Positions 13,594-29,030 of a stretch of DNA of 36,882 nt are shown here, one piece after another; the stretch's first letter is position 1; each line of letters begins with the position of its first letter. Under the pieces are notes generated by a model. It was not told where the DNA came from. It did not search any database and saw only the letters and a list, made by a program, of their open reading frames with translations. The stretch comes from Salpingoeca rosetta (taxonomy: Eukaryota; Protista; Choanoflagellata): NCBI GenBank assembly GCA_033442325.1, contig JAWQFM010000025.1, positions 1,004,467 through 1,041,348 of the forward strand, read 5' to 3'. The translations under genes and the position numbers were made by a program.

Positions 13594-16500
13594 ATGATGG
13601 AAGACAACTTTGTGCTCGTGCACCACACGCACGACGAGGACATTGAGGTTGCGCATCAGAAGCAGCTGTTGAAGCAGCTGCAGCAGCGCGAGGAGAAGCG
13701 CCAAGAGCGCCTCAAACGCCAGGAGGCGAGGCTCAGGCGCCAGATGGAGAGAGAGCAAGGCATCAGCACCAGCACGGCAGACAATAACGTCTTTACCGAG
13801 GGGCAAGGGGATCAGGAGGAGCAGGAGGACGATGATGACGACGTGCCCAACGACGTGATGGTGCCGGAACTGGCGCGCAACATGTACATGCACATGCTCA
13901 TTCGCTGCAACGGCCGCGATGTCCTGCTCAAGCGTGAGATTGACGGCCCGCTCCCGCCAACGCTTGCCCGCATCGCCAAGAAGTTTAAAATGAAGGCTGA
14001 CGACGTGCGCGTGGATACGCAGGGCGCCAGCACGCCCACCCAAGCCCCGACGATCGGCGCTGAGCCTGTGAAGCGCGATGCTGTGGAGCAGCCGCAAGCA
14101 ACAACGACGACAACGCCATCCGCAGCCACAGCCGCCACCACGGCTACGGCAACGACCGCGACAGCGCCGGCTGTGCCGCAAATGATCACGGTGACGGACG
14201 AGCACGCGGAGACGCGCGTCGACGCGACGTCGCCCACCGTCGGCGCAGCAGAGGACGTGTACGGCAACCCGATCAACACGAACACCAAGGACCCGAGCAA
14301 GCTGTCCAACTACTGGGCATTCCGCCAGGGCTGTGCGCTTGTGCTGGGCGATCAGCAGCTGCCCGTGTATCACCACGCGCCGGTGGTGGTGTCGCTGTTT
14401 GTGCGCGGGTTCCCCATGGTCGGCAGCATGCTGCACCCCATGGCAACCCTGCACAACTGCACGGCCAACACCTGCAAGTGGGCGTGGTACCGCACCTCCA
14501 AGTACGTGTCGCACAAGGTCATTGAGCGCGTGGACGCGTTTGGACAGCACGCCAACATCGAGGTCTCGGAGGCGGACGGCGACGTGCTTGTGGCCACGAC
14601 CCGCCGCTACACCCCGACCGCAGACGACATTGGCCACCGCCTCATCTGCATGTGCACCCCCGTCAACGAGCTGTGCGCAGGCATCCCCGTGTGTGTCCTT
14701 GTTGGTTCGCGTGATGACACCCGCATCAACCGCCAAGACTTTTACACCAGCGGTACCGACAACAACGACAGCGGCAACGGCAACGACAACGGCAGCAGCG
14801 TTGAGACGCCAGCAGCGCGATGCCAGCGCCTGTCCCGGTCCGTGTGCGAGATGCAGCTGCACCCTGTCGTGCTTGCCCGCCACGCCTTTGCGCAGAGCCG
14901 CGAGCTCTCGCCAGGCATGATGCGCGTGGTCTCGTACAATATCCTGCACGACATGTTTTGTGATGGCACGTTTGCGCTGGAGCACCTGTACCCGTACCTC
15001 GACCCGATCCACGCCAAGACCAACTACCGCCACCGCCGCATTGCCGAGGAGATTGCAGGCTACCTGCCAGACTTTGTCTGCCTGCAGGAGGTTGGACACG
15101 CAGAGTTTCACGAGGTGCTCGAGCCACGCCTCGGTGCAGCAGGTGCGTTGCTGCTGGTGGGGCGCTGTCGGCAGTGGTTGATGGTGTGATGGTGACGGCG
15201 GTGGTGATGGTGGTGGCAGCAATGCGTTTCTGGTGGTGGCTATGTGTTTGAAGCCCGTGGTGGTGGTGGTGGTGGTGGTGGTGGTGGTGGTGGTGGTGGG
15301 ACAAGGGTGTGGCCGAAGATCGTGACAAACGACCCCACAGCGTGTTTACCATGTGCTTGCGTTACCTTTCACTGACACCCCCTCCCTCCTTTCGCCAACG
15401 ACTTGTCGATTTGACGTTCAGGTCTGCATGGCGTGTATGCGAACAAAATCAGCCAGCAGCGCTGGGGGATGGCCACGTTCTTCCGCCGTGAAAGGTACAG
15501 CATTGTGTGTGTGTGTGTGTGGTGTGTGTGTGTGTGTGTGCTTGCATTTGTTGAAGTCTCGCTCGGCGCTGAACTATTCTTGAAACCCTCCACGCCTCAC
15601 ATCCGTTTCTTGCTCACCCGATGTTCCTCTGTGCTCAATCGCCACCCCCACCACGACCACCGCCGCCACCATCATCACCATTTGCCATTTCCATCATCAC
15701 CATTCCGACCACCGCCGCCACGACGACGGCGACGACTGCGTGTCAGGTGGTCGCTGCTTGAGGCGCACCGGCTCAACCTGACGCGACAGTGGCGCGTGCA
15801 CAGCACTATTGCAAGTGTGGCATCGTCCCAGCCTGCGCTGCAGGATCAGCTTGAGAACAGCACGACCGTTGCCCAGCTGCTGCTGCTGCAGTGTGCAGAC
15901 GGCAGCCGCCACTATGACGGCCAGCTCCTGTGCGTGGTGAACTGCCATCTCTTCAGCCACCCAATGGCCCCGCACGTGCGCGTGATCCAGGCCGCCGTGA
16001 TTGCTGCGGAGATCAAGGACCGCTTTGGTGCCGTGCCCGTCATCTGGTGTGGTGACTTCAACGCCAACCCAAATGCAGCCGTTGTCCAGTTTCTTCACCA
16101 CCGCTCGGTCCGTCATCACGCTGACTTTCTTGCTTGCTTCGTGTGTGTGTGTGTGTGCGTGTGCGTGCGTGTGTGTGTGTGTGTGTGTGCGTGTGCGTGT
16201 GCGTGTGCGTGTGCGTGCGTGTGTGCACGTGGGCTGGTATGTCTTCGAACATGGTTCTTTTGAGTGCGATACCTTGAACGCTCTTGTTAACCCTTCCATA
16301 CACACACACACACGCACACAGATTGAGGAGACACACCCCGTGTGGGCGGAGGGCGCGTGCATCACACGGTTCAAGTCTGCCACAAAGGCCCAGCGCGAGG
16401 CCAACTGGCACAGCGTGCTAGGTAGCGCTGAGGTGCACATGGCTCGCTCCTACTTTGCCACGCTTGCCTCCGCGGACACGCAGTTGCTCAGCCCTGTCGC

Positions 16501-17266
16501 CATGTTCTCCTACACGGACGCGCACGGCGCTGAGGGGCTTGCGGCAACAAAGGCGTTTGGCGAGGATGCGATGCGCGCGTGCACGCAGGAGGGCGGCCTG
16601 TCGTACCAGGACTTCTTTGGAGCGCTGGTCGACCTCCGCTTGGAGGCGCCGGACCTCTTTTCCGCCCTGCAAGACAACGCCCCTCCCATCGATGACCTCC
16701 GCAGTGGCATGGGCAGCCGCACCAACAGCACAAGCGGTGGTCTTCGCAGCAGGCTCGCCTCGTCCCCGACAACAACAGTAGCGCCACACGCCGCACCAGC
16801 ACAGCAACAGCAGCAGCAAGGGGAAGAGGAGTCGTTGGCGAGCAGCAGGACACCAGATCCTGCACTGACGCGGGCTGCCATCAGCAGTGCCGCTCTCACG
16901 GTTCCATCGCCGTCCTCGCAGCACCTGCAGCTGCGTGACAGCGGCGCCAGCACCACCTCCATCGTCAGCCTTGCGTCGCGTGCGCTTGTGTCCGGGTTTG
17001 GGCTGAGCTCGTTCTCCATGGCGCTGCAGCACAACCTTGAGCTGCACTGCTCTGTTCGCCAGCCCACGTACAGTGCCGGCATCCCCGCCAAGCCCGAGCA
17101 GGTGGACTATGTCTTCTACACCCCGCAGATCCAAATGCGCATGGAGCAGCCGCCCACGTTTGCGTTTCACCACATTGAGAACGGCCTCCCCAGCGAATTC
17201 CTGCCGTCTGACCATGTTGCCTCTGTTGTCGATTTCGCGTGGAACCGCATGGCCCTGCAACAGTAA
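13594..17266 (+). CDS. PDE12: 2',5'-phosphodiesterase 12 / CCR4-like EEP-family nuclease, ~975 aa, 4 exons
   Basis: Phase-consistent exons 13594-15142, 15422-15494, 15747-16107, 16322-17266 (2928 nt). Motifs: WAWYR..YTPTADDIGHRLICMCTP (N-terminal module of PDE12/plant CCR4), RVVSYNIL, CLQEV, GMATFFRRER, NCHLFSHP, GDFN, DYVF, PSDH. Confidence 0.88.
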
Positions 17267-17602
17267 ACAAAGAAATCTGCTGCAACGGCACTGCGGCCAC
17301 CACCGCCACTACCACCACCACCGGTAACGACGAGGGGTGGTGGCCACACCTGCAAGAGGGCATCTGGTGTGCCCGCAACAACCAAGTAGTCATTGTGAAT
17401 AGGCGAGGCGGGAGCTCCCTTACTGAAAACTAAATTATGGTGGGAGCGTCAGGTGTTTTCGTCACACCAACCACAACCACGCCCGTCTGTTGGTGATTGA
17501 TATAATGGCTTGTAAGGTGGAAGGAATAGCGTCGCAGGTCGTGTCACATTCCTGTGATGTGATTTGTTTCGAATACAAAGGAACAACACCCACACTAGCA
17601 GC

Positions 17603-17981
17603 ATGAGGTTTCTCGCAGCTACCATCGTGGCTACGGCCCTGCTCGCGACAATGGCCTCCGCCCTCAGCCCAGGTCAAACCTCGCCCAGTAACACGGACGA
17701 GGCCGATGTGTCTGGGGTTGCCGTCGATTACATTGACATTGGCAGTGCCGCATATGAGGCGTTGAACAACTTTGACACCTTCGTTGGCACCTCCGTGAGT
17801 TTGGCAGTGCTGGCGTGCTGATAGCATCGTAGAATCATGCCCTTCTTATCTCGTGTCGAACCAACACATACTAAAGCATCTGCACCGACATTGCCTCAAA
17901 CTGGCTTGCACACACGAGGCCCAACAACGCTGAAACGCTTCCCCAAGCCACGTTGCACTCTCTGTTTCCATCACCCACTCA

Positions 17982-18038
<57 letters not shown>

Positions 18039-20803
18039 AACAGCATGGTATTGTGTTCGACAAGGAGTCGCACAAGCTGATGACCCAGTACATGGCACAG
18101 CTTCTTCAAGCCCTTGACAACGCCATTGGCGAGGACATTGCTGTTGTCCGCGGGTTCCAGTCACGCCCCCAAGTCCCAACATCGGCCCCCTCACTCCTTG
18201 ATGTTGGTCGCGCCCTTCGACTTCGGTACAAAGCGGATGGCAGTGCATCCTCCGATGCCCGCCTCAGCACCCTTGCCCAGGCCTGCATCAACGCCGGCTT
18301 TGACTTTGTGGCTGTGCCCGCAGACACGACCACAGACAACTACGTCTATGTCAGCACCCCCAAGATGGACTGCGGTGACGCTGTTGCAGACCTTCTGTTC
18401 ATTCTCGATGGCTCCGGCTCTGTTGGCTCTGGCAACTTTCAGACCATGCTCAACTTTGCCCAGGAGGTGGTGTCCTTCTTCGACGTCGCACCCGACAAGA
18501 CGCGTGTTGCTGCCATGGTCTATGACAGCTCCAACTACCGCAAGTTTGATTTTGACTACATTCAGTCCGTCTCCAAGCAGCAGCTCATCAACTACTTCGA
18601 CACGTTCGCCTACCCTGATGGTGAGCGACAGAGCGGTTGACGTGATTTGCTGCTTTGGTGCAGATAATTTGGATATGAATGAATGCTGTTTGTCGGTGTG
18701 CGCCTTGAGCATCTTGACTTACACTCTCACCTCCCTCCTTGTGGGTTTCCCTGCTGCAGGTGGTACGGAGACTGGCAGCGCCCTCTCCTTTGCTCTCAGC
18801 AGCATGTTCGTCACATCCCGCGGGGTGAGCGTGTACATGTGTGTGTGTGTGTGTGCGGGTCGATGTGCGTGTTCATGTTCATGTGCTGTTTGCACATGAC
18901 CCCACAGCAAGTTCCCCAATGTGGGCGCCTGTCTTCTTTGAGCTCACACCTGTCTTGCATCTGTGTGCGCATAGGCTCGCGACTTGAGCGAGGGTGTGCC
19001 TCGTGTTGCCATTGTTATCACGGACGGCAAATCCGGCGACGATGTTTCTGCACCAGCGCAGGCCCTTCGCGACGCTGGCGTTACTCTCTATGCTGTCGGT
19101 GAGAACGGAAGTGGATAGCGTTGGGGATTCTGAGGTTGAGTTTGACGAGACGAGATAGAGGTGTGGAAGATTGTGGACACACCCAGCGGGAGTGAGCTTG
19201 CGAGGTTCATACGATAAGTATCACTCACCACTAATAAATGACACCACGCTGCAACTTCGACACGAACAGGCATCTCTGGTGCTGATGTGAGCGAGTTGAA
19301 CCAGATTGCCAGCCCACCTGTTGAGGACAACGTTGTCTTCATTGACACGTTCAGCGAGTTCTCCGCCCTTGCCTCGAAGATTTCCCGCGCCAACTGCGAC
19401 CAGCCTGCTAGTGTCTCCTCCGACATTGACGTGCGTGTGTGCGTGTGTGTGTGTGTGTGTCTGTCTGTCCAAGAGCAGACATGGGATCTCCTTCGCCTTG
19501 CTCGCCCTCTAACAACCCTTTCAATCACTGCACCATCCCTTGCTATCGTCGCTGTCGTGCAGATTGAGGTCAACAACACCTCCCCCGGTGACATCCGCTA
19601 CTACCGCCCGGACCTTGATGGGCTCACAGAGTCCGTCCTCATCGTTGTTGAAACTACCGGTGGCGCAACGTAAGTGAGAGCTAGTGTGTGTGCGCGTGTG
19701 CGTGTGTGTGTGTGGGGGGGTTGGGGGTTGGGGGGGGGGTTGGGGGAGGTGCGCAAGTGCGTGCGTGTTTGTTTCCTGCCCGAGTCGACCATCGTTGTCT
19801 CGCCTCTTTTCCTCCACACTAACACAAACACAAACACAAACACAAACACAAACACAAACACAAACACAAACACAAACACAAACACAAACACACACACACA
19901 CACTACAGTGATCTGTACGTGTCGACCAACCCCAACCCTGGTCCATTCAACTATGACTATGCTGTGGAGAACGACGACGCAATCAAGGCAGTGCTGGTGG
20001 ACAACACTGGCAACGAGGACTACTACGTGAGCGTGCGCAGCCGTTCCGACGACCCCGCAGACACCGTCAGCTACCGTGTGATAATCACCAACGCCATTTT
20101 CCAAGGCAACGCCAGCTACACCATCTACGTCAGCACCGACGAGAACGTTGCAGGCACTCCCATCTTCACGCTGCCGCCACTCCGCAGCTTCGACGTTGTG
20201 CCCTCGTTCATGTTTGACCTGTTTGGTCCGGATGAGGACAAGTTTGTGCTCGTCAACGACAGCGAGGTGGTGCTGACGGCCCCACTCGAGTTTGGCAAGC
20301 GGCACGTGGTTGCCATTGAGGGCATCGACGAAGCCAACAATCTCGCTGGCGGCATTGCCCTCAACGTCATCTACAACGAGATGCCGTGGACGGCCAGCCC
20401 CGACAATGGCCACGAGTACCAGATCAACTACCTGAAGAAGCTCAACTGGTTCGACGCCAAGGAGGCGTGCGAGGCAAACAACGCCCAGCTTGCCTCCGTG
20501 TCCTCAGTGCAGGAGAACAACTGGCTTGCCGAGCTCGCCCTCAACACCACCCTCGGCTCTGGTCTGCATCAAGCCTGGCTTGGCGGCCACTTCCCGCCCG
20601 TGTTCGCTTGGACCGACGGCTCTGCCGCCACCGACTTTGGCTTCCCGTGGAGCGTCGAGGACAACGACCCGCACGCGCACTGCCGCTTCAATTGCCTTGC
20701 CCTCAAGTTCAAGGACAAGAAGACCACGCCCGCTAGCGAGTGGAAAGATCTCCGCTGCGGTCGCAAGCGCGCGTACATCTGCAAGCGCCCCATCGCTGCT
20801 TGA
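17603..20803 (+). CDS. Secreted hedgling-related protein, 706 aa: signal peptide, Hedge domain, vWA, PPC-like domain, cadherin-like repeat, C-type lectin domain
   Basis: Phase-consistent exons 17603-17794, 18044-18620, 18760-18824, 18975-19098, 19270-19430, 19563-19669, 19909-20803 (2121 nt). Signal peptide [20 protein letters not shown]. Hedge-like blocks [38 protein letters not shown]. v[59 protein letters not shown]. Confidence 0.9.
19822..19890. repeat. (ACACAA)n hexanucleotide repeat just upstream of a splice acceptor
   Basis: Direct inspection; appears as TNTNTN / TQTQTQ in the ORF track. Confidence 0.95.
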
Positions 20804-20907
20804 GCCGCAGCATAGGGTGGAGTTTGCCGCATGGAACGGCAAAGACTTCTCGACTACTTGGCGTTGTCTTGCTCTTGTGATGTCAGAGTTCACTTGCTTT
20901 CTCTCTC

Positions 20908-21000
<93 letters not shown>

Positions 21001-21001
<1 letters not shown>

Positions 21002-21972
21002 GGGGACGCTCGTATCCCGATTCGCTATCAGTACACCACAAGCTGCTTTCATTTCTGGTTTCCACTCCAAGTAAGTGAGGGATGCTCGAGACACACTAAA
21101 GGGGGAGGAGGGAAGCATACACAATCAAGCACACATCAAGTGCAGCGGACACGAAAAGGGATGAAGAGCCGGCACGATGCATGGTCACCATGTTGGCACG
21201 ATTGCACTTCTTTGCTTCTCACTACAACAAACTCGCGCAGCGCCAGCATCGTCATCCACTTCAGCAGCACGTCATCGCAGTAGTCGCTGTGGTGCAGCTG
21301 CCTCATCTGACAGGCCACCAGGCTCAGCGCAATGGCCGTCATTAATGACAGCTTGAAGTCGAGGCCCGGCTCCAGGTTGTTGGCGTCCAGAAACGCAACC
21401 AGGTCGCGCGGCTCCAAGCGCGGGTGCAGCTGCTGGCATGTTCCATGTGGTGGCGTGATGGTGGTTATGCTTATCGATGCGCCTACAGTGTGTGTGTGTG
21501 TGTGTGTTGGGGACGCTCGTATCCCGATTCGCTATCAGTACACCACAAGCTGCTTTCATTTCTGGTTTCCACTCCAAGTAAGTGAGGGATGCTCGAGACA
21601 CACTAAAGGGGGAGGAGGGAAGCATACACAATCAAGCACACATCAAGTGCAGCGGACACGAAAAGGGATGAAGAGCCGGCACGATGCATGGTCACCATGT
21701 TGGCACGATTGCACTTCTTTGCTTCTCACTACAACAAACTCGCGCAGCGCCAGCATCGTCATCCACTTCAGCAGCACGTCATCGCAGTAGTCGCTGTGGT
21801 GCAGCTGCCTCATCTGACAGGCCACCAGGCTCAGCGCAATGGCCGTCATTAATGACAGCTTGAAGTCGAGGCCCGGCTCCAGGTTGTTGGCGTCCAGAAA
21901 CGCAACCAGGTCGCGCGGCTCCAAGCGCGGGTGCAGCTGCTGGCATGTTCCATGTGGTGGCGTGATGGTGGT
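21001..21972. repeat. Tandem direct duplication with a 507-bp period (21001-21465 and 21508-21972), each copy preceded by (GT)n
   Basis: The copies look identical by eye from tggggacgctcgtatccc to tggcgtgatggtggt. The ORF track shows identical peptides 507 bp apart (LLLTTTNSRSASIVIHFSSTSSQ; LVAFLDANNLEPGLDFK). Confidence 0.95.
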
Positions 21973-23138
21973 GGTGGGGAGGAGAGATTGGTGGTTGGTG
22001 TGATGAGTGGAAGTTGTGTGTATCAGCAGTAGTCGTGGTGGATGGGAGTCACAAACAGACAGAGACAGACAGGCACACACACACACACACACACAGACAC
22101 ACAGACAGACACACACACACACACACACCTGTAGCCGATGAAGACGTCGTATCACTCCTGCAGGCCGAGGACTGGCAGGAGAGGACCATACTTGGGCGAC
22201 CAAGTCATTGGGCGACAGCAGGTGTTCGTCAACCCACAGCCGCGTCCTGTCGACGTGGAGCACGCTGTTTTCACCTGCAGAGAGTACAGCAGGTGGAGAC
22301 GAACATGCGTTGTGAGTTGGAGATGAGCGGTTAGAGAAGGTCAACACGACTGCTGGTGTAGGTTGTTGACCCATCACACATGCACCCGCTCGCACACACA
22401 GCGGCTGCAAGGATATACACGTGCGTGCCAAGAAAGACAGCGCATGGCAGCCGCCTCCAATGACAGCTGGGTGCCCACGCTCACTTGAGTTGCGTGACAG
22501 CCGTGTTGTGCGTCAGCGCGTCTGCCAACGCCACAGCACCGTCCGGTGCAAGCTGTCAACATGCAAAGCAGTGGTCACTGGTAACGACGGAAAAGAGGAG
22601 CAAGGGGAGGGATCGTGAGTGGCAAGCGAAGGGGGTAGAAGGGTACACTGACATCACACACGGGCTTCAGCCACTGGCTTCAGGTGTGCTGTGCCACAGC
22701 GTGGCATTGCGCTCAGCCATGAACTGGGGGTGGGCTGTGCAATCACAACACACGCCAACGACACTTCTCTCCCATGCATGGGTTGTGTCAAGACTCACTT
22801 GAGCCGCGCGATGGTCGCATTGTGCTTCAGCCCTTGTGCCAACGCTGTAGCGCCCTCGGGGCTGATGTGGTTGCTGCTCAGGCTGTAGCCCCACAACCAA
22901 AACCACGATGGTGGGAGGGGAGGGGAAAGGGAAGGTAGGGGTGGTTGGTCATGAGCCAAGGGCGAAGGCAGCACGAGGAACATGACATGGCATGATGGAA
23001 GCGGTGCGCATGACGGTAGCTGCTGAATCAGTGGCGCGTGTCGCATGCAATCCATATGTGCACGCACGCACGCACTCGAGTCTTGTGACGGTGGTGTTGT
23101 CCTTGACAGCCACTGCAAGTGCGCGCATTCCACCATCG

Positions 23139-23170
<32 letters not shown>

Positions 23171-23343
23171 TGTCATCCCTTGGTCACCTCACTCACGTTT
23201 GTAGAAGCGTACGGATTCAGGCTGGATATGTCGTTGTCACCAGTTTGGATATAACGAAGTTCACATTTCTCGATCTGTCTGCGGCTACTGAGTATTATTC
23301 GATGTACGTGCGATACGGCAAGTGCGCGCATTCCTACCACTCG

Positions 23344-27996: not shown

Positions 27997-28908
27997 NNNN
28001 NNNNNNNNNNNNNNNNNNNNNNNNNNNNNNNNNNNNNNNNNNNNNNNNNNNNNNNNNNNNNNNNNNNNNNNNNNNNNNNNNNNNNNNNNNNNNNNNNNNN
28101 NNNNNNNNNNNNNNNNNNNNNNNNNNNNNNNNNNNNNNNNNNNNNNNNNNNNNNNNNNNNNNNNNNNNNNNNNNNNNNNNNNNNNNNNNNNNNNNNNNNN
28201 NNNNNNNNNNNNNNNNNNNNNNNNNNNNNNNNNNNNNNNNNNNNNNNNNNNNNNNNNNNNNNNNNNNNNNNNNNNNNNNNNNNNNNNNNNNNNNNNNNNN
28301 NNNNNNNNNNNNNNNNNNNNNNNNNNNNNNNNNNNNNNNNNNNNNNNNNNNNNNNNNNNNNNNNNNNNNNNNNNNNNNNNNNNNNNNNNNNNNNNNNNNN
28401 NNNNNNNNNNNNNNNNNNNNNNNNNNNNNNNNNNNNNNNNNNNNNNNNNNNNNNNNNNNNNNNNNNNNNNNNNNNNNNNNNNNNNNNNNNNNNNNNNNNN
28501 NNNNNNNNNNNNNNNNNNNNNNNNNNNNNNNNNNNNNNNNNNNNNNNNNNNNNNNNNNNNNNNNNNNNNNNNNNNNNNNNNNNNNNNNNNNNNNNNNNNN
28601 NNNNNNNNNNNNNNNNNNNNNNNNNNNNNNNNNNNNNNNNNNNNNNNNNNNNNNNNNNNNNNNNNNNNNNNNNNNNNNNNNNNNNNNNNNNNNNNNNNNN
28701 NNNNNNNNNNNNNNNNNNNNNNNNNNNNNNNNNNNNNNNNNNNNNNNNNNNNNNNNNNNNNNNNNNNNNNNNNNNNNNNNNNNNNNNNNNNNNNNNNNNN
28801 NNNNNNNNNNNNNNNNNNNNNNNNNNNNNNNNNNNNNNNNNNNNNNNNNNNNNNNNNNNNNNNNNNNNNNNNNNNNNNNNNNNNNNNNNNNNNNNNNNNN
28901 NNNNNNNN
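27997..28908. other. Assembly gap (N run)
   Basis: Run of N. Confidence 1.
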
Positions 28909-29030
28909 GCCCGCGGCACCAAGAAGCCACCAAGCCCACCGTCCGCGCCACACGGATTGCCCACTGAGCGATTGACCTCCAACCAAACCCCACAACCCTA
29001 CGCCGCTCCTCAGGCTCCACACACACAGCC

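What the first reader, a model, noticed from the sequence alone, without database searches (positions are those of the whole stretch)
17603..20803. Soluble 'mini-hedgling': a secreted Hedge domain fused to vWA and a C-type lectin, with no Hint domain or membrane anchor
Seen: joining exons 1-2 reveals a domain hidden in the ORF track. It aligns end to end with the Hedgehog N-terminal signalling domain: [23 protein letters not shown] (cf. TLGASG..ISRNSERFKEL..IIFKDE), [14 protein letters not shown] (RLMTQRCKDKLNAL), [11 protein letters not shown] (SLHYEGRAVDI), [13 protein letters not shown] (LARLAVEAGFDWV), YVYVS (HIHCS). It is followed by a vWA domain, two beta-sandwich modules and a terminal CTLD. 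Established: hedglings of choanoflagellates, sponges and cnidarians have Hedge+vWA on long membrane-anchored cadherin stalks, and a secreted C-type-lectin protein (Rosetteless) is needed for S. rosetta colonies. Hedge-domain proteins in choanoflagellates are already known, so the novelty is the architecture and function. Inference: a diffusible two-ended ligand or matrix cross-linker, giving a pre-animal way to release a Hedge domain without Hint autoprocessing.
Basis: partly seen in the sequence, partly recalled or inferred. Interest (0 to 1): 0.88.

Follow-up and report, generated by a model that had tools for sequence, protein, structure and literature searches.

The report
Secreted Hedge-vWA-lectin protein, already published
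This is a real, expressed choanoflagellate gene for a secreted protein that joins a Hedgehog-like N-terminal domain to vWA, cadherin-like and C-type lectin domains, but this class of protein was already described in the 2013 Salpingoeca rosetta genome paper and its function is still untested.

Summary
Window 17603-20803 (+) is a seven-exon GT-AG gene for a 706-aa protein. Transcript contigs and stranded RNA reads match every exon and run unspliced through the stop codon into the 3' UTR.

Domain order:
- signal peptide
- Hedge domain, split over exons 1 and 2
- vWA
- an unassigned beta module
- one cadherin-like EC fold
- C-type lectin domain (CTLD)

There is no Hint domain and no second hydrophobic segment.

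The Hedge call fails Pfam HH_signal directly. Three other tests support it:
- A six-sequence paralogue profile puts only Hedgehog N domains among its top 22 PDB hits (best E 0.003).
- An AlphaFold model matches 38 Hh-N structures first (E down to 7e-6, TM about 0.63), then M15 peptidases.
- hhalign links it to the genome's own hedgling (E 3.9e-7), which passes Pfam.

The Zn and Ca ligands of Shh are absent.

The architecture is not new. Fairclough et al. 2013 (PMC4054682, endnote c and Fig. S6) report seven S. rosetta N-hh+VWA proteins. Their domain key includes C-type lectin. Three are described as small, secreted, TM-less and possibly "secreted ligands". My profile finds exactly seven such loci; only this one and a paralogue carry a CTLD.

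Function is inferred: most likely a multivalent extracellular matrix or adhesion protein. Interest is low to moderate.

The parts
17603..17662 (+). Start codon and signal peptide (residues 1-20, likely cleavage after ASA)
   Evidence: This is the only hydrophobic 19-mer window in the protein (KD 2.02, residues 3-22). The transcript contig X12 starts at 17604. The cleavage site is inferred from the AxA rule; SignalP was not run.
17690..18385 (+). Hedge (Hedgehog N-terminal-like) domain, residues ~30-178, split by intron 1 (17795-18043)
   Evidence: The paralogue profile against PDB gives only Hh-N in its top 22 hits (best E 0.003). Foldseek's top 38 hits are Hh-N (E 7e-6 to 3e-4, TMq 0.56-0.65). 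hhalign to the S. rosetta hedgling gives E 3.9e-7. Exon 1 aligns to the hedgling at E 2e-4. Pfam HH_signal itself gives no hit.
18389..19397 (+). vWA domain (residues ~180-362) across exons 2-5. MIDAS-type residues DGSGS, GGTETG and TDG are present. Cys174 and Cys362 flank the domain.
   Evidence: Pfam VWA hits exon 2 at E 8e-14 and exon 4 at E 1e-8, both above cut-off. The MIDAS residues and cysteines are read from the spliced protein. The C174-C362 disulfide is inferred.
19563..20101 (+). First post-vWA beta-rich module (residues ~374-473), exon 6 plus the start of exon 7; family unassigned (PPC-like is a lead only)
   Evidence: It is conserved in all paralogues and in the hedgling (alignment A3; tblastn). 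It has no Pfam hit. The Atlas feature search gives PPC-containing clusters at 0.86, below the reliable range.
20102..20389 (+). Cadherin EC-like beta-sandwich (residues ~474-569)
   Evidence: The AF2 model has pLDDT 77-90 over this stretch. More than 40 of the top Foldseek hits are cadherin/protocadherin EC domains, best E 8e-5. The aligned hedgling stretch gets a sub-threshold Pfam Cadherin_FAT4_N hit (30.8 bits, cut-off 35), followed by cadherin repeats that pass the Pfam Cadherin cut-off (90.5 vs 28.8 bits).
20438..20788 (+). C-type lectin-like domain (residues ~586-702). The canonical EPN/QPD and WND motifs are absent (EDNDPH and WKD instead).
   Evidence: Pfam Lectin_C gives E 4.6e-10 and 40.6 bits against a cut-off of 22.6. 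PDB phmmer finds mannose-receptor-family CTLDs at E 5e-15. The AF2 model of this part is poor (pLDDT below 50).
20801..20905 (+). Stop codon TGA (20801-20803) and the start of the 3' UTR
   Evidence: Transcript contigs run uninterrupted from 19911 to 20905 and beyond. Read depth is about 300 in the last bin, and no joint leaves exon 7.
17603..20803 (+). Whole CDS: exons 17603-17794, 18044-18620, 18760-18824, 18975-19098, 19270-19430, 19563-19669 and 19909-20803

Best explanation
Shown: this is an expressed seven-exon gene of Salpingoeca rosetta. It encodes a 706-aa secreted protein with the order signal peptide, Hedge domain, vWA, beta module, one cadherin-like EC domain, C-type lectin-like domain. 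It is one of the five 'non-hedgling' Hedgehog-domain/VWA proteins of this species already reported in 2013. In effect it is the N-terminal ~570 residues of a hedgling, with the cadherin stalk and membrane anchor replaced by a lectin domain.

Inferred: it works as a multivalent extracellular matrix or adhesion protein, not as a Hedgehog-type morphogen. The Hedge domain has lost the zinc triad and the calcium ligands, so it is a non-catalytic binding module fixed directly to the vWA. The vWA keeps MIDAS-type residues and could bind a partner through a divalent cation. The EC-like and lectin-like domains offer further binding surfaces at the other end. The whole protein could therefore bridge matrix or cell-surface components.
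For: Gene model and expression.

Secretion without an anchor: there is a single N-terminal hydrophobic stretch, the stop comes directly after the CTLD, and RNA is contiguous through it.

Hedge fold and homology.

Metal sites: in the HMMER alignment to Dhh, the Shh Zn ligands H141/D148/H183 fall on L/R/Y, catalytic E177 falls on P, and the acidic Ca cluster (TEGWDEDGHH) falls on [10 protein letters not shown].

Other domains: vWA and CTLD pass Pfam cut-offs; EC fold.

Homology to the hedgling beyond the Hedge-vWA cassette.

Same species and same gene set as the paper: the genome is 55.4 Mb, and its paralogue loci read identically to PTSG_11196 and PTSG_10134. The profile finds exactly seven Hedge loci, five non-hedgling and two hedglings.

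Prior description: PMC4054682 endnote c and Fig. S6 legend.
Against: No functional data exist for this protein, and matrix localisation is not shown.

Pfam HH_signal does not reach threshold on this protein. The Hedge model rests on a six-sequence alignment, covers only the exon-2 part, and has pLDDT 70.7.

The CTLD lacks the canonical sugar-binding motifs, so its ligand is unknown.

I could not see Fig. S6 itself or obtain the PTSG identifier. I therefore cannot tell whether the paper drew this gene among the TM-less, colony-enriched three or among the four with a 'predicted TM'.
Confidence: 0.6

Rival explanations
1. It is a diffusible signalling ligand. The secreted Hedge domain binds a Patched-like receptor of S. 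rosetta, which would be a pre-animal Hedgehog-Patched signal without Hint processing.
For: Fairclough et al. suggest that the TM-less Hh-domain proteins 'may act as secreted ligands' and note Patched homologues in the genome. The protein is secreted and has a Hedge fold.
Against: The Zn and Ca sites are not conserved; from structural literature recalled here, these form much of the Shh surface bound by Ptch1, Hhip, CDO/BOC and Ihog. There is no N-terminal Cys for palmitoylation and no cholesterol-adding Hint domain. The Hedge domain is never freed from a 706-aa multidomain protein. Patched-family proteins also act as sterol transporters (my own knowledge, not checked here), so their presence does not imply a ligand.
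Confidence: 0.15
2. It is a secreted bacteria-binding (prey or cue recognition) protein. The Hedge domain, derived from the LAS/M15 peptidoglycan-peptidase fold, and the lectin domain would bind bacterial cell-wall components without cleaving them.
For: After Hh-N, the next structural neighbours are peptidoglycan peptidases and endolysins. A CTLD is present. By established biology, choanoflagellates feed on bacteria and respond to them.
Against: The Zn ligands and catalytic residues that line the substrate cleft are replaced. The CTLD lacks EPN/QPD and WND. No binding data exist. The hedgling relatives are adhesion-type molecules.
Confidence: 0.15
3. It is membrane-tethered after all, through an alternative 3' exon, a GPI anchor, or a stable complex with a membrane protein, and so acts as a short hedgling at the cell surface.
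For: The 2013 paper says four of the seven Hh-domain proteins have a predicted TM, and only two of the seven loci are true hedglings.
Against: RNA contigs and reads run through the stop with no joint leaving exon 7. The C-terminus (…YICKRPIAA) is not hydrophobic, so there is no GPI signal. The paralogue on C34 also stops right after its CTLD. TM predictors often score signal peptides as TM helices (my own knowledge).
Confidence: 0.05

Closest known systems
The five non-hedgling Hh-domain/VWA proteins of Salpingoeca rosetta (Fairclough et al. 2013, Genome Biol 14:R15, endnote c and Fig. S6)
   Same: The species is the same, and the number of loci is the same: seven in all, five of them non-hedgling. 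All have the Hedge domain immediately N-terminal of a VWA. C-type lectin is listed in the figure's domain key. A small, signal-peptide-bearing, TM-less subclass is described as possible secreted ligands.
   Different: Nothing differs in kind: this gene is one of them. Points added here are the RNA-verified exon structure, the fold-level proof of the Hedge domain, the loss of the metal sites, the EC-like fold, and the existence of a full-length CTLD-bearing paralogue on contig C34.
Hedgling (Adamska et al. 2007; choanoflagellates, sponges, cnidarians); S. rosetta copy at G000:C5 (L006)
   Same: Both have an N-terminal Hedge domain abutting a vWA, followed by the same beta module and a first cadherin-type domain. 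Homology is colinear over ~570 residues. Both have an incomplete DD-peptidase motif (PMC6027127).
   Different: Hedgling continues into many cadherin repeats (plus EGF/TNFR/furin modules in some) and, per the 2013 paper, a transmembrane anchor. Here a single degenerate EC-like domain is followed by a CTLD and a stop. The hedgling Hedge domain passes Pfam HH_signal (56 bits); this one does not.
Hedgehog N-terminal signalling domain (ShhN/IhhN/DhhN, Pfam PF01085)
   Same: Same alpha/beta fold (Foldseek TMq ~0.63, 24-27% identity). The sequence motifs are colinear: LMT-helix, GRAL, AGFDFV, YV.VS.
   Different: It has no Zn triad, no Ca cluster, no palmitoylated N-terminal Cys, and no Hint/Hog autoprocessing domain or cholesterol adduct. 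The domain is not released from the rest of the protein.
Rosetteless
   Same: Same organism, and both are secreted proteins with C-type lectin-like domains.
   Different: No homology outside the CTLD was tested or is claimed. Rosetteless has no Hedge or vWA domain as far as I recall. Any functional link is speculation.

Membership tests
Hedgehog N-terminal signalling domain (Pfam HH_signal, PF01085) | Score above the Pfam gathering cut-off (22.1 bits) | tested here: not met
   No hit at E<=1 on the exon 1 or exon 2 pieces, nor on the full paralogues P0002 and P0003. The spliced domain as one chain could not be submitted. The genome's hedgling scores 56-60 bits.
Hedgehog N-terminal signalling domain (Pfam HH_signal, PF01085) | Hh-N / LAS alpha-beta sandwich fold | tested here: met
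   The AF2 model of residues 65-179 (pLDDT 70.7) gives Foldseek ranks 1-38 that are all Hh-N (E 7e-6 to 3e-4, TMq 0.56-0.65), followed by M15 peptidases.
Hedgehog N-terminal signalling domain (Pfam HH_signal, PF01085) | Detectable sequence homology to solved Hh-N domains | tested here: met
   The six-sequence paralogue profile gives Dhh at E 0.003, and all 22 top PDB hits are Hedgehog proteins. The link through the hedgling is hhalign E 3.9e-7, prob 92.8%.
Hedgehog N-terminal signalling domain (Pfam HH_signal, PF01085) | Zn-coordinating H/D/H triad plus catalytic Glu (Hh/DD-peptidase motif), and the acidic Ca-binding cluster | tested here: not met
   In the HMMER alignment to Dhh, the positions of Shh H141, D148, H183 and E177 are L, R, Y and P. 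The TEGWDEDGHH stretch corresponds to [10 protein letters not shown].
Hedgehog proteins (full-length) | C-terminal Hint/Hog autoprocessing domain and an N-terminal Cys for lipidation | tested here: not met
   No Hint family appears in any exon piece. The CDS ends in a CTLD. The mature N-terminus has no Cys: the cysteines are at 145, 174, 362, 596, 667, 671, 692 and 700.
Hedgling | N-terminal Hedge domain immediately followed by a vWA domain | tested here: met
   The Hedge domain ends at about residue 178 and the vWA starts at about residue 180.
Hedgling | Long stalk of multiple cadherin repeats | tested here: not met
   There is one EC-like fold only and no Pfam Cadherin hit. The CDS ends 137 residues after it.
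Hedgling | Transmembrane anchor | tested here: not met
   There is no hydrophobic 19-mer outside residues 3-22, and RNA runs through the stop. The scan used Kyte-Doolittle hydropathy, not TMHMM.
von Willebrand factor A domain (PF00092) | Pfam score above cut-off; MIDAS residues DxSxS...T...D | tested here: met
   Scores are 52.6 and 35.9 bits on exons 2 and 4 against a cut-off of 23.8. DGSGS, GGTETG and ITDG are read in the spliced protein. Metal binding itself was not tested.
C-type lectin-like domain (PF00059) | Pfam score above cut-off and the conserved Cys framework | tested here: met
   The score is 40.6 bits against a cut-off of 22.6. PDB hits to mannose-receptor-family CTLDs reach E 5e-15. 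C596, C671, C692 and C700 are at the expected places.
C-type lectin-like domain (PF00059) | Ca-dependent sugar-binding motifs EPN or QPD plus WND | tested here: not met
   The sequence reads ...[11 protein letters not shown]... and ...EWKDLRC.... The exact register of the first motif is uncertain.
Non-hedgling Hh+VWA proteins of S. rosetta (Fairclough 2013) | Encoded in the S. rosetta genome, Hh-like domain N-terminal of a VWA, not a hedgling | tested here: met
   The genome is 55.4 Mb, and loci L003 and L004 carry PTSG_11196 and PTSG_10134. It is one of exactly five non-hedgling loci hit by the profile. The PTSG identifier of this gene could not be retrieved.

The most novel reading that the evidence does not exclude
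The secreted Hedge-vWA-EC-CTLD protein (with its C34 paralogue) may be a functional extracellular cue or scaffold of S. rosetta multicellularity. It could be a matrix organiser of rosettes acting alongside Rosetteless, or a true ligand of the choanoflagellate Patched homologues. Either would place a Hedge-domain-based cell-cell system before the origin of animals.
Probability: 0.07. Interest if true: 0.85.

Novelty: already known. Interest (0 to 1): 0.25.

Why it matters
Hedge-domain proteins in the closest relatives of animals bear on where Hedgehog signalling came from. This gene shows that the Hedge-vWA cassette was reused in short secreted proteins as well as in membrane-anchored hedglings. 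That point was made in 2013.

What remains open is function, and it is directly testable now that S. rosetta can be edited: do these secreted proteins build matrix, bind bacteria, or signal?

The present work adds a verified gene model, fold-level proof of the Hedge domain, the finding that its metal sites are gone, and the recognition of an EC-like domain. These should steer experiments toward adhesion and matrix roles rather than morphogen-like roles.

Tried and rejected
- Pfam HH_signal on the exon pieces and on paralogues: no hit, or a sub-threshold one (P0004, E 0.036, 14 bits).
- Single-sequence phmmer of the exon-2 piece against PDB: only chance hits.
- The search of protein representatives with the Hedge piece: 5 hits only, and the window's own protein was not returned.
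- Two homologous-protein runs with PTSG_10134 (whole, then region 40-200) to pull out the full-length protein id. The first was swamped by vWA candidates and the second returned only the query. The spliced protein therefore never had an id. The Hedge domain was folded from exon 2 only, and the full 706-aa chain was not scanned or folded as one piece.
- Attempts to find the PTSG identifier and per-cell-type FPKM in the paper's supplements. Phrase search does not cross punctuation, and only two hits per file are shown. This failed, so expression by cell type for this gene is not reported.
- AF2 of exon 7: the CTLD part was poor (pLDDT below 50), so the CTLD rests on sequence evidence only.
- Atlas feature search for the first beta module: PPC-like clusters at 0.86, which is below the level where such hits are reliable. 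I kept this as a lead only.
- Idea that a loose end at 20398 marks alternative splicing: rejected. Its letters read like the C34 paralogue.
Full report
**What is there**

ORF listing and direct reading of 17400-21100 show seven coding pieces on the + strand, separated by short introns rich in (CA)n. I joined them at GT..AG sites. The result is a 2121-nt CDS of 706 codons plus a TGA stop, with no frame problem. The exons are 17603-17794, 18044-18620, 18760-18824, 18975-19098, 19270-19430, 19563-19669 and 19909-20803.

**RNA evidence**

Public runs of the same organism hold the stretch. Laying four of them on 17450-20905 gave the following:
- Two assembled transcript contigs (X12, from a 2011 study, and X4) are each split into exactly the seven pieces of the model.
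- Two 2026 stranded RNA-seq runs have depth 20-540 over the exons and about 0 over the introns. Nearly all first mates lie on the minus strand, so the RNA is on the + strand under the usual stranded-library convention.
- Raw-read joints with GT..AG ends fall at 18619/18759 and 19097/19269.
- Loose ends at 18974, 19563 and 19669 spell the end or start of the neighbouring exon. The remaining junctions lie next to microsatellites that the tool skipped.
- The contigs run without a break from 19911 through the stop (20801-20803) to 20905 and beyond. Depth stays near 300 in the last bin, and no joint leaves exon 7.

**Which organism**

The window is contig C25 of a 55.4-Mb, 68-contig assembly. Two paralogue loci in it read identically to NCBI proteins PTSG_11196 and PTSG_10134 of Salpingoeca rosetta. 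The genome paper gives 55 Mb for that species. I take the genome to be S. rosetta.

**Domains that pass curated thresholds**

Pfam on the exon pieces gives the following:
- VWA on exon 2: E 8e-14.
- VWA on exon 4: E 1e-8.
- Lectin_C on exon 7: E 4.6e-10, 40.6 bits against a cut-off of 22.6.

The CTLD piece also finds mannose-receptor-family CTLDs in the PDB at E 5e-15. It has the usual cysteine framework. It reads EDNDPH and WKD where sugar-binding CTLDs have EPN/QPD and WND, so canonical Ca-dependent sugar binding is not expected (inference).

The vWA has DGSGS, GGTETG and ITDG at the MIDAS positions. It is flanked by Cys174 and Cys362, which are conserved in every family member inspected. 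A stapling disulfide is inferred.

**Is the N-terminus a Hedge domain?**

This was the core claim, and the simple tests fail:
- Pfam HH_signal gives nothing at E<=1 on exon 1, on exon 2, or on the full-length paralogues. A 14-bit hit on one metagenomic relative is the only trace.
- Single-sequence phmmer against PDB gives only noise.

More sensitive tests succeed:
- An exhaustive phmmer of the exon-2 Hedge piece against 1.84 billion representatives found four relatives, two S. rosetta paralogues and two marine-metagenome proteins. The fifth hit, E 3.6e-4, looks like chance.
- A search of the own genome found five further loci.
- A profile of six non-hedgling pieces (A2) searched against the PDB returns Desert, Sonic, Indian and Drosophila Hedgehog N domains as all 22 top hits. 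The best E is 0.003, and the match is colinear over profile positions 4-107.
- AlphaFold2 on the same alignment gives a model with pLDDT 70.7 and pTM 0.68.
- Foldseek against the PDB ranks 38 Hh-N structures first (E 7e-6 to 3e-4, TMq 0.56-0.65, 21-27% identity). These are followed by M15/LAS peptidases: ChiX, endolysins, VanXY and DD-peptidase.
- One of the genome's own loci (C5, L006) is a true hedgling. It passes Pfam HH_signal (56 bits), VWA and Cadherin.
- hhalign of A2 against the hedgling gives probability 92.8% and E 3.9e-7 over the HH_signal-matched stretch.
- Exon 1 aligns just upstream on the hedgling at E 2e-4.

**What the Hedge domain lacks**

In the HMMER alignment to Dhh:
- The Zn ligands of Shh (H141, D148, H183) are L, R and Y here.
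- The catalytic Glu is P.
- The acidic Ca cluster is replaced by [10 protein letters not shown].

There is no Cys after the signal peptide and no Hint domain. This matches what Roelink (PMC6027127) notes for hedglings: an incomplete Hh/DD-peptidase motif. The Hedge domain ends about two residues before the vWA starts, so nothing suggests that it is released on its own.

**The middle of the protein**

- The second module was folded from exon 7 (pLDDT 77-90 over model residues 65-160). It is a cadherin EC fold: more than 40 top Foldseek hits are cadherins or protocadherins, best E 8e-5. It aligns to the first cadherin-type domain of the hedgling.
- The first module has no family assignment. A PPC-like resemblance is only a weak lead.

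The protein is therefore literally a hedgling N-terminus (Hedge, vWA, module, first EC) capped by a CTLD.

**No anchor**

A Kyte-Doolittle scan finds one hydrophobic stretch, residues 3-22, which is the signal peptide. The C-terminus is polar.

**Family in the genome**

The profile A2 finds exactly seven loci:
- C25, which is this gene.
- C34.
- C27, which is PTSG_10134.
- Two near-identical copies on C4, of the PTSG_11196 type with a receptor-L-domain C-terminus.
- Two long-ORF loci on C5. One (L006) is shown to be a hedgling; the other I take to be the second hedgling from its 1513-aa open frame.

The C34 paralogue is 63% identical in the Hedge piece. It has the same full architecture, including a CTLD and a stop right after it, plus a poly-Thr linker. 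A marine-metagenome relative, 52% identical over exon 2 by tblastn, shares the exon 1/exon 2 split.

**Comparison with what is known**

Endnote c and the Fig. S6 legend of Fairclough et al. 2013 (PMC4054682) state the following:
- S. rosetta encodes seven proteins with an Hh signal domain, always N-terminal of a VWA.
- Five of the seven are not hedglings.
- The domain key of the figure includes C-type lectin.
[quoted passage not shown] My count of seven loci matches. Only this gene and its C34 paralogue carry a CTLD, so the C-Lec box in that figure must be one or both of them. The architecture and the 'secreted ligand' idea are therefore published.

I could not see the figure or recover the PTSG id. 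I therefore cannot say in which expression group the paper placed this gene.

**How it most likely works**

Shown: it is a secreted protein with several binding-type domains, the Hedge domain has no metal site, and the vWA has MIDAS-type residues.

Inferred: it acts as a multivalent extracellular matrix or adhesion protein that bridges partners through the Hedge-vWA head and the EC-CTLD tail (confidence about 0.6).

Rivals:
- A Patched-directed diffusible ligand, 0.15. The missing Shh interaction sites and lipids weaken this.
- A bacteria-binding protein that uses the peptidase-derived fold and the lectin domain, 0.15.
- A hidden membrane tether, 0.05.

**Verdict**

Novelty: already known. Residual value lies in the verified model and the structural details, and in the fact that no one has tested the function.

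Read laying was given 3456 letters.

Noticed in passing
window 20981-21280 and 21488-21787: A perfect 300-nt direct repeat with 507-nt spacing lies just 3' of the gene. The duplicated ORFs come from it. It may be a recent tandem duplication or an assembly artefact.
   Followed up: partly
window ~27997-29000: A run of N (assembly gap) explains the GC 0.059 bin in the composition profile.
   Followed up: yes
window 17985-18043 and 19810-19908: Introns 1 and 6 end in long (CA)n / (CAAA)n tracts directly before the AG acceptor instead of a U-rich tract. Both junctions are used in RNA. The same pattern was noted by the scan elsewhere in this genome (s1-434539).
   Followed up: partly
G000:C4:122956-123273 (L003) and G000:C4:264758-265075 (L005): Two near-identical copies of the PTSG_11196-type Hedge-vWA gene lie about 142 kb apart on one contig. 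The second is interrupted by an N gap. They probably correspond to PTSG_11196 and PTSG_11167, both listed as colony-upregulated in the 2013 supplements.
   Followed up: partly
G000:C34:~19500-23200 (L007, minus strand): A full-length paralogue with the same Hedge-vWA-module-EC-CTLD order carries a ~20-residue poly-Thr linker before the CTLD and a stop right after the CTLD.
   Followed up: partly
L008 (ENA marine metagenome contig, 4237 nt), 670-1616: An environmental relative is 41% identical to this protein over exon 1 and 52% over exon 2 (tblastn). It has the same split of the Hedge domain over two exons, so the subfamily exists in uncultured marine organisms.
   Followed up: partly
window 16001-17266: A long upstream + strand ORF, with a poly-Gln stretch and a C-terminal part that looks like a conserved enzyme domain, ends about 340 nt before the start codon. 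Contig X4 joins it to this gene's transcript, presumably an assembly join across neighbouring genes.
   Followed up: no
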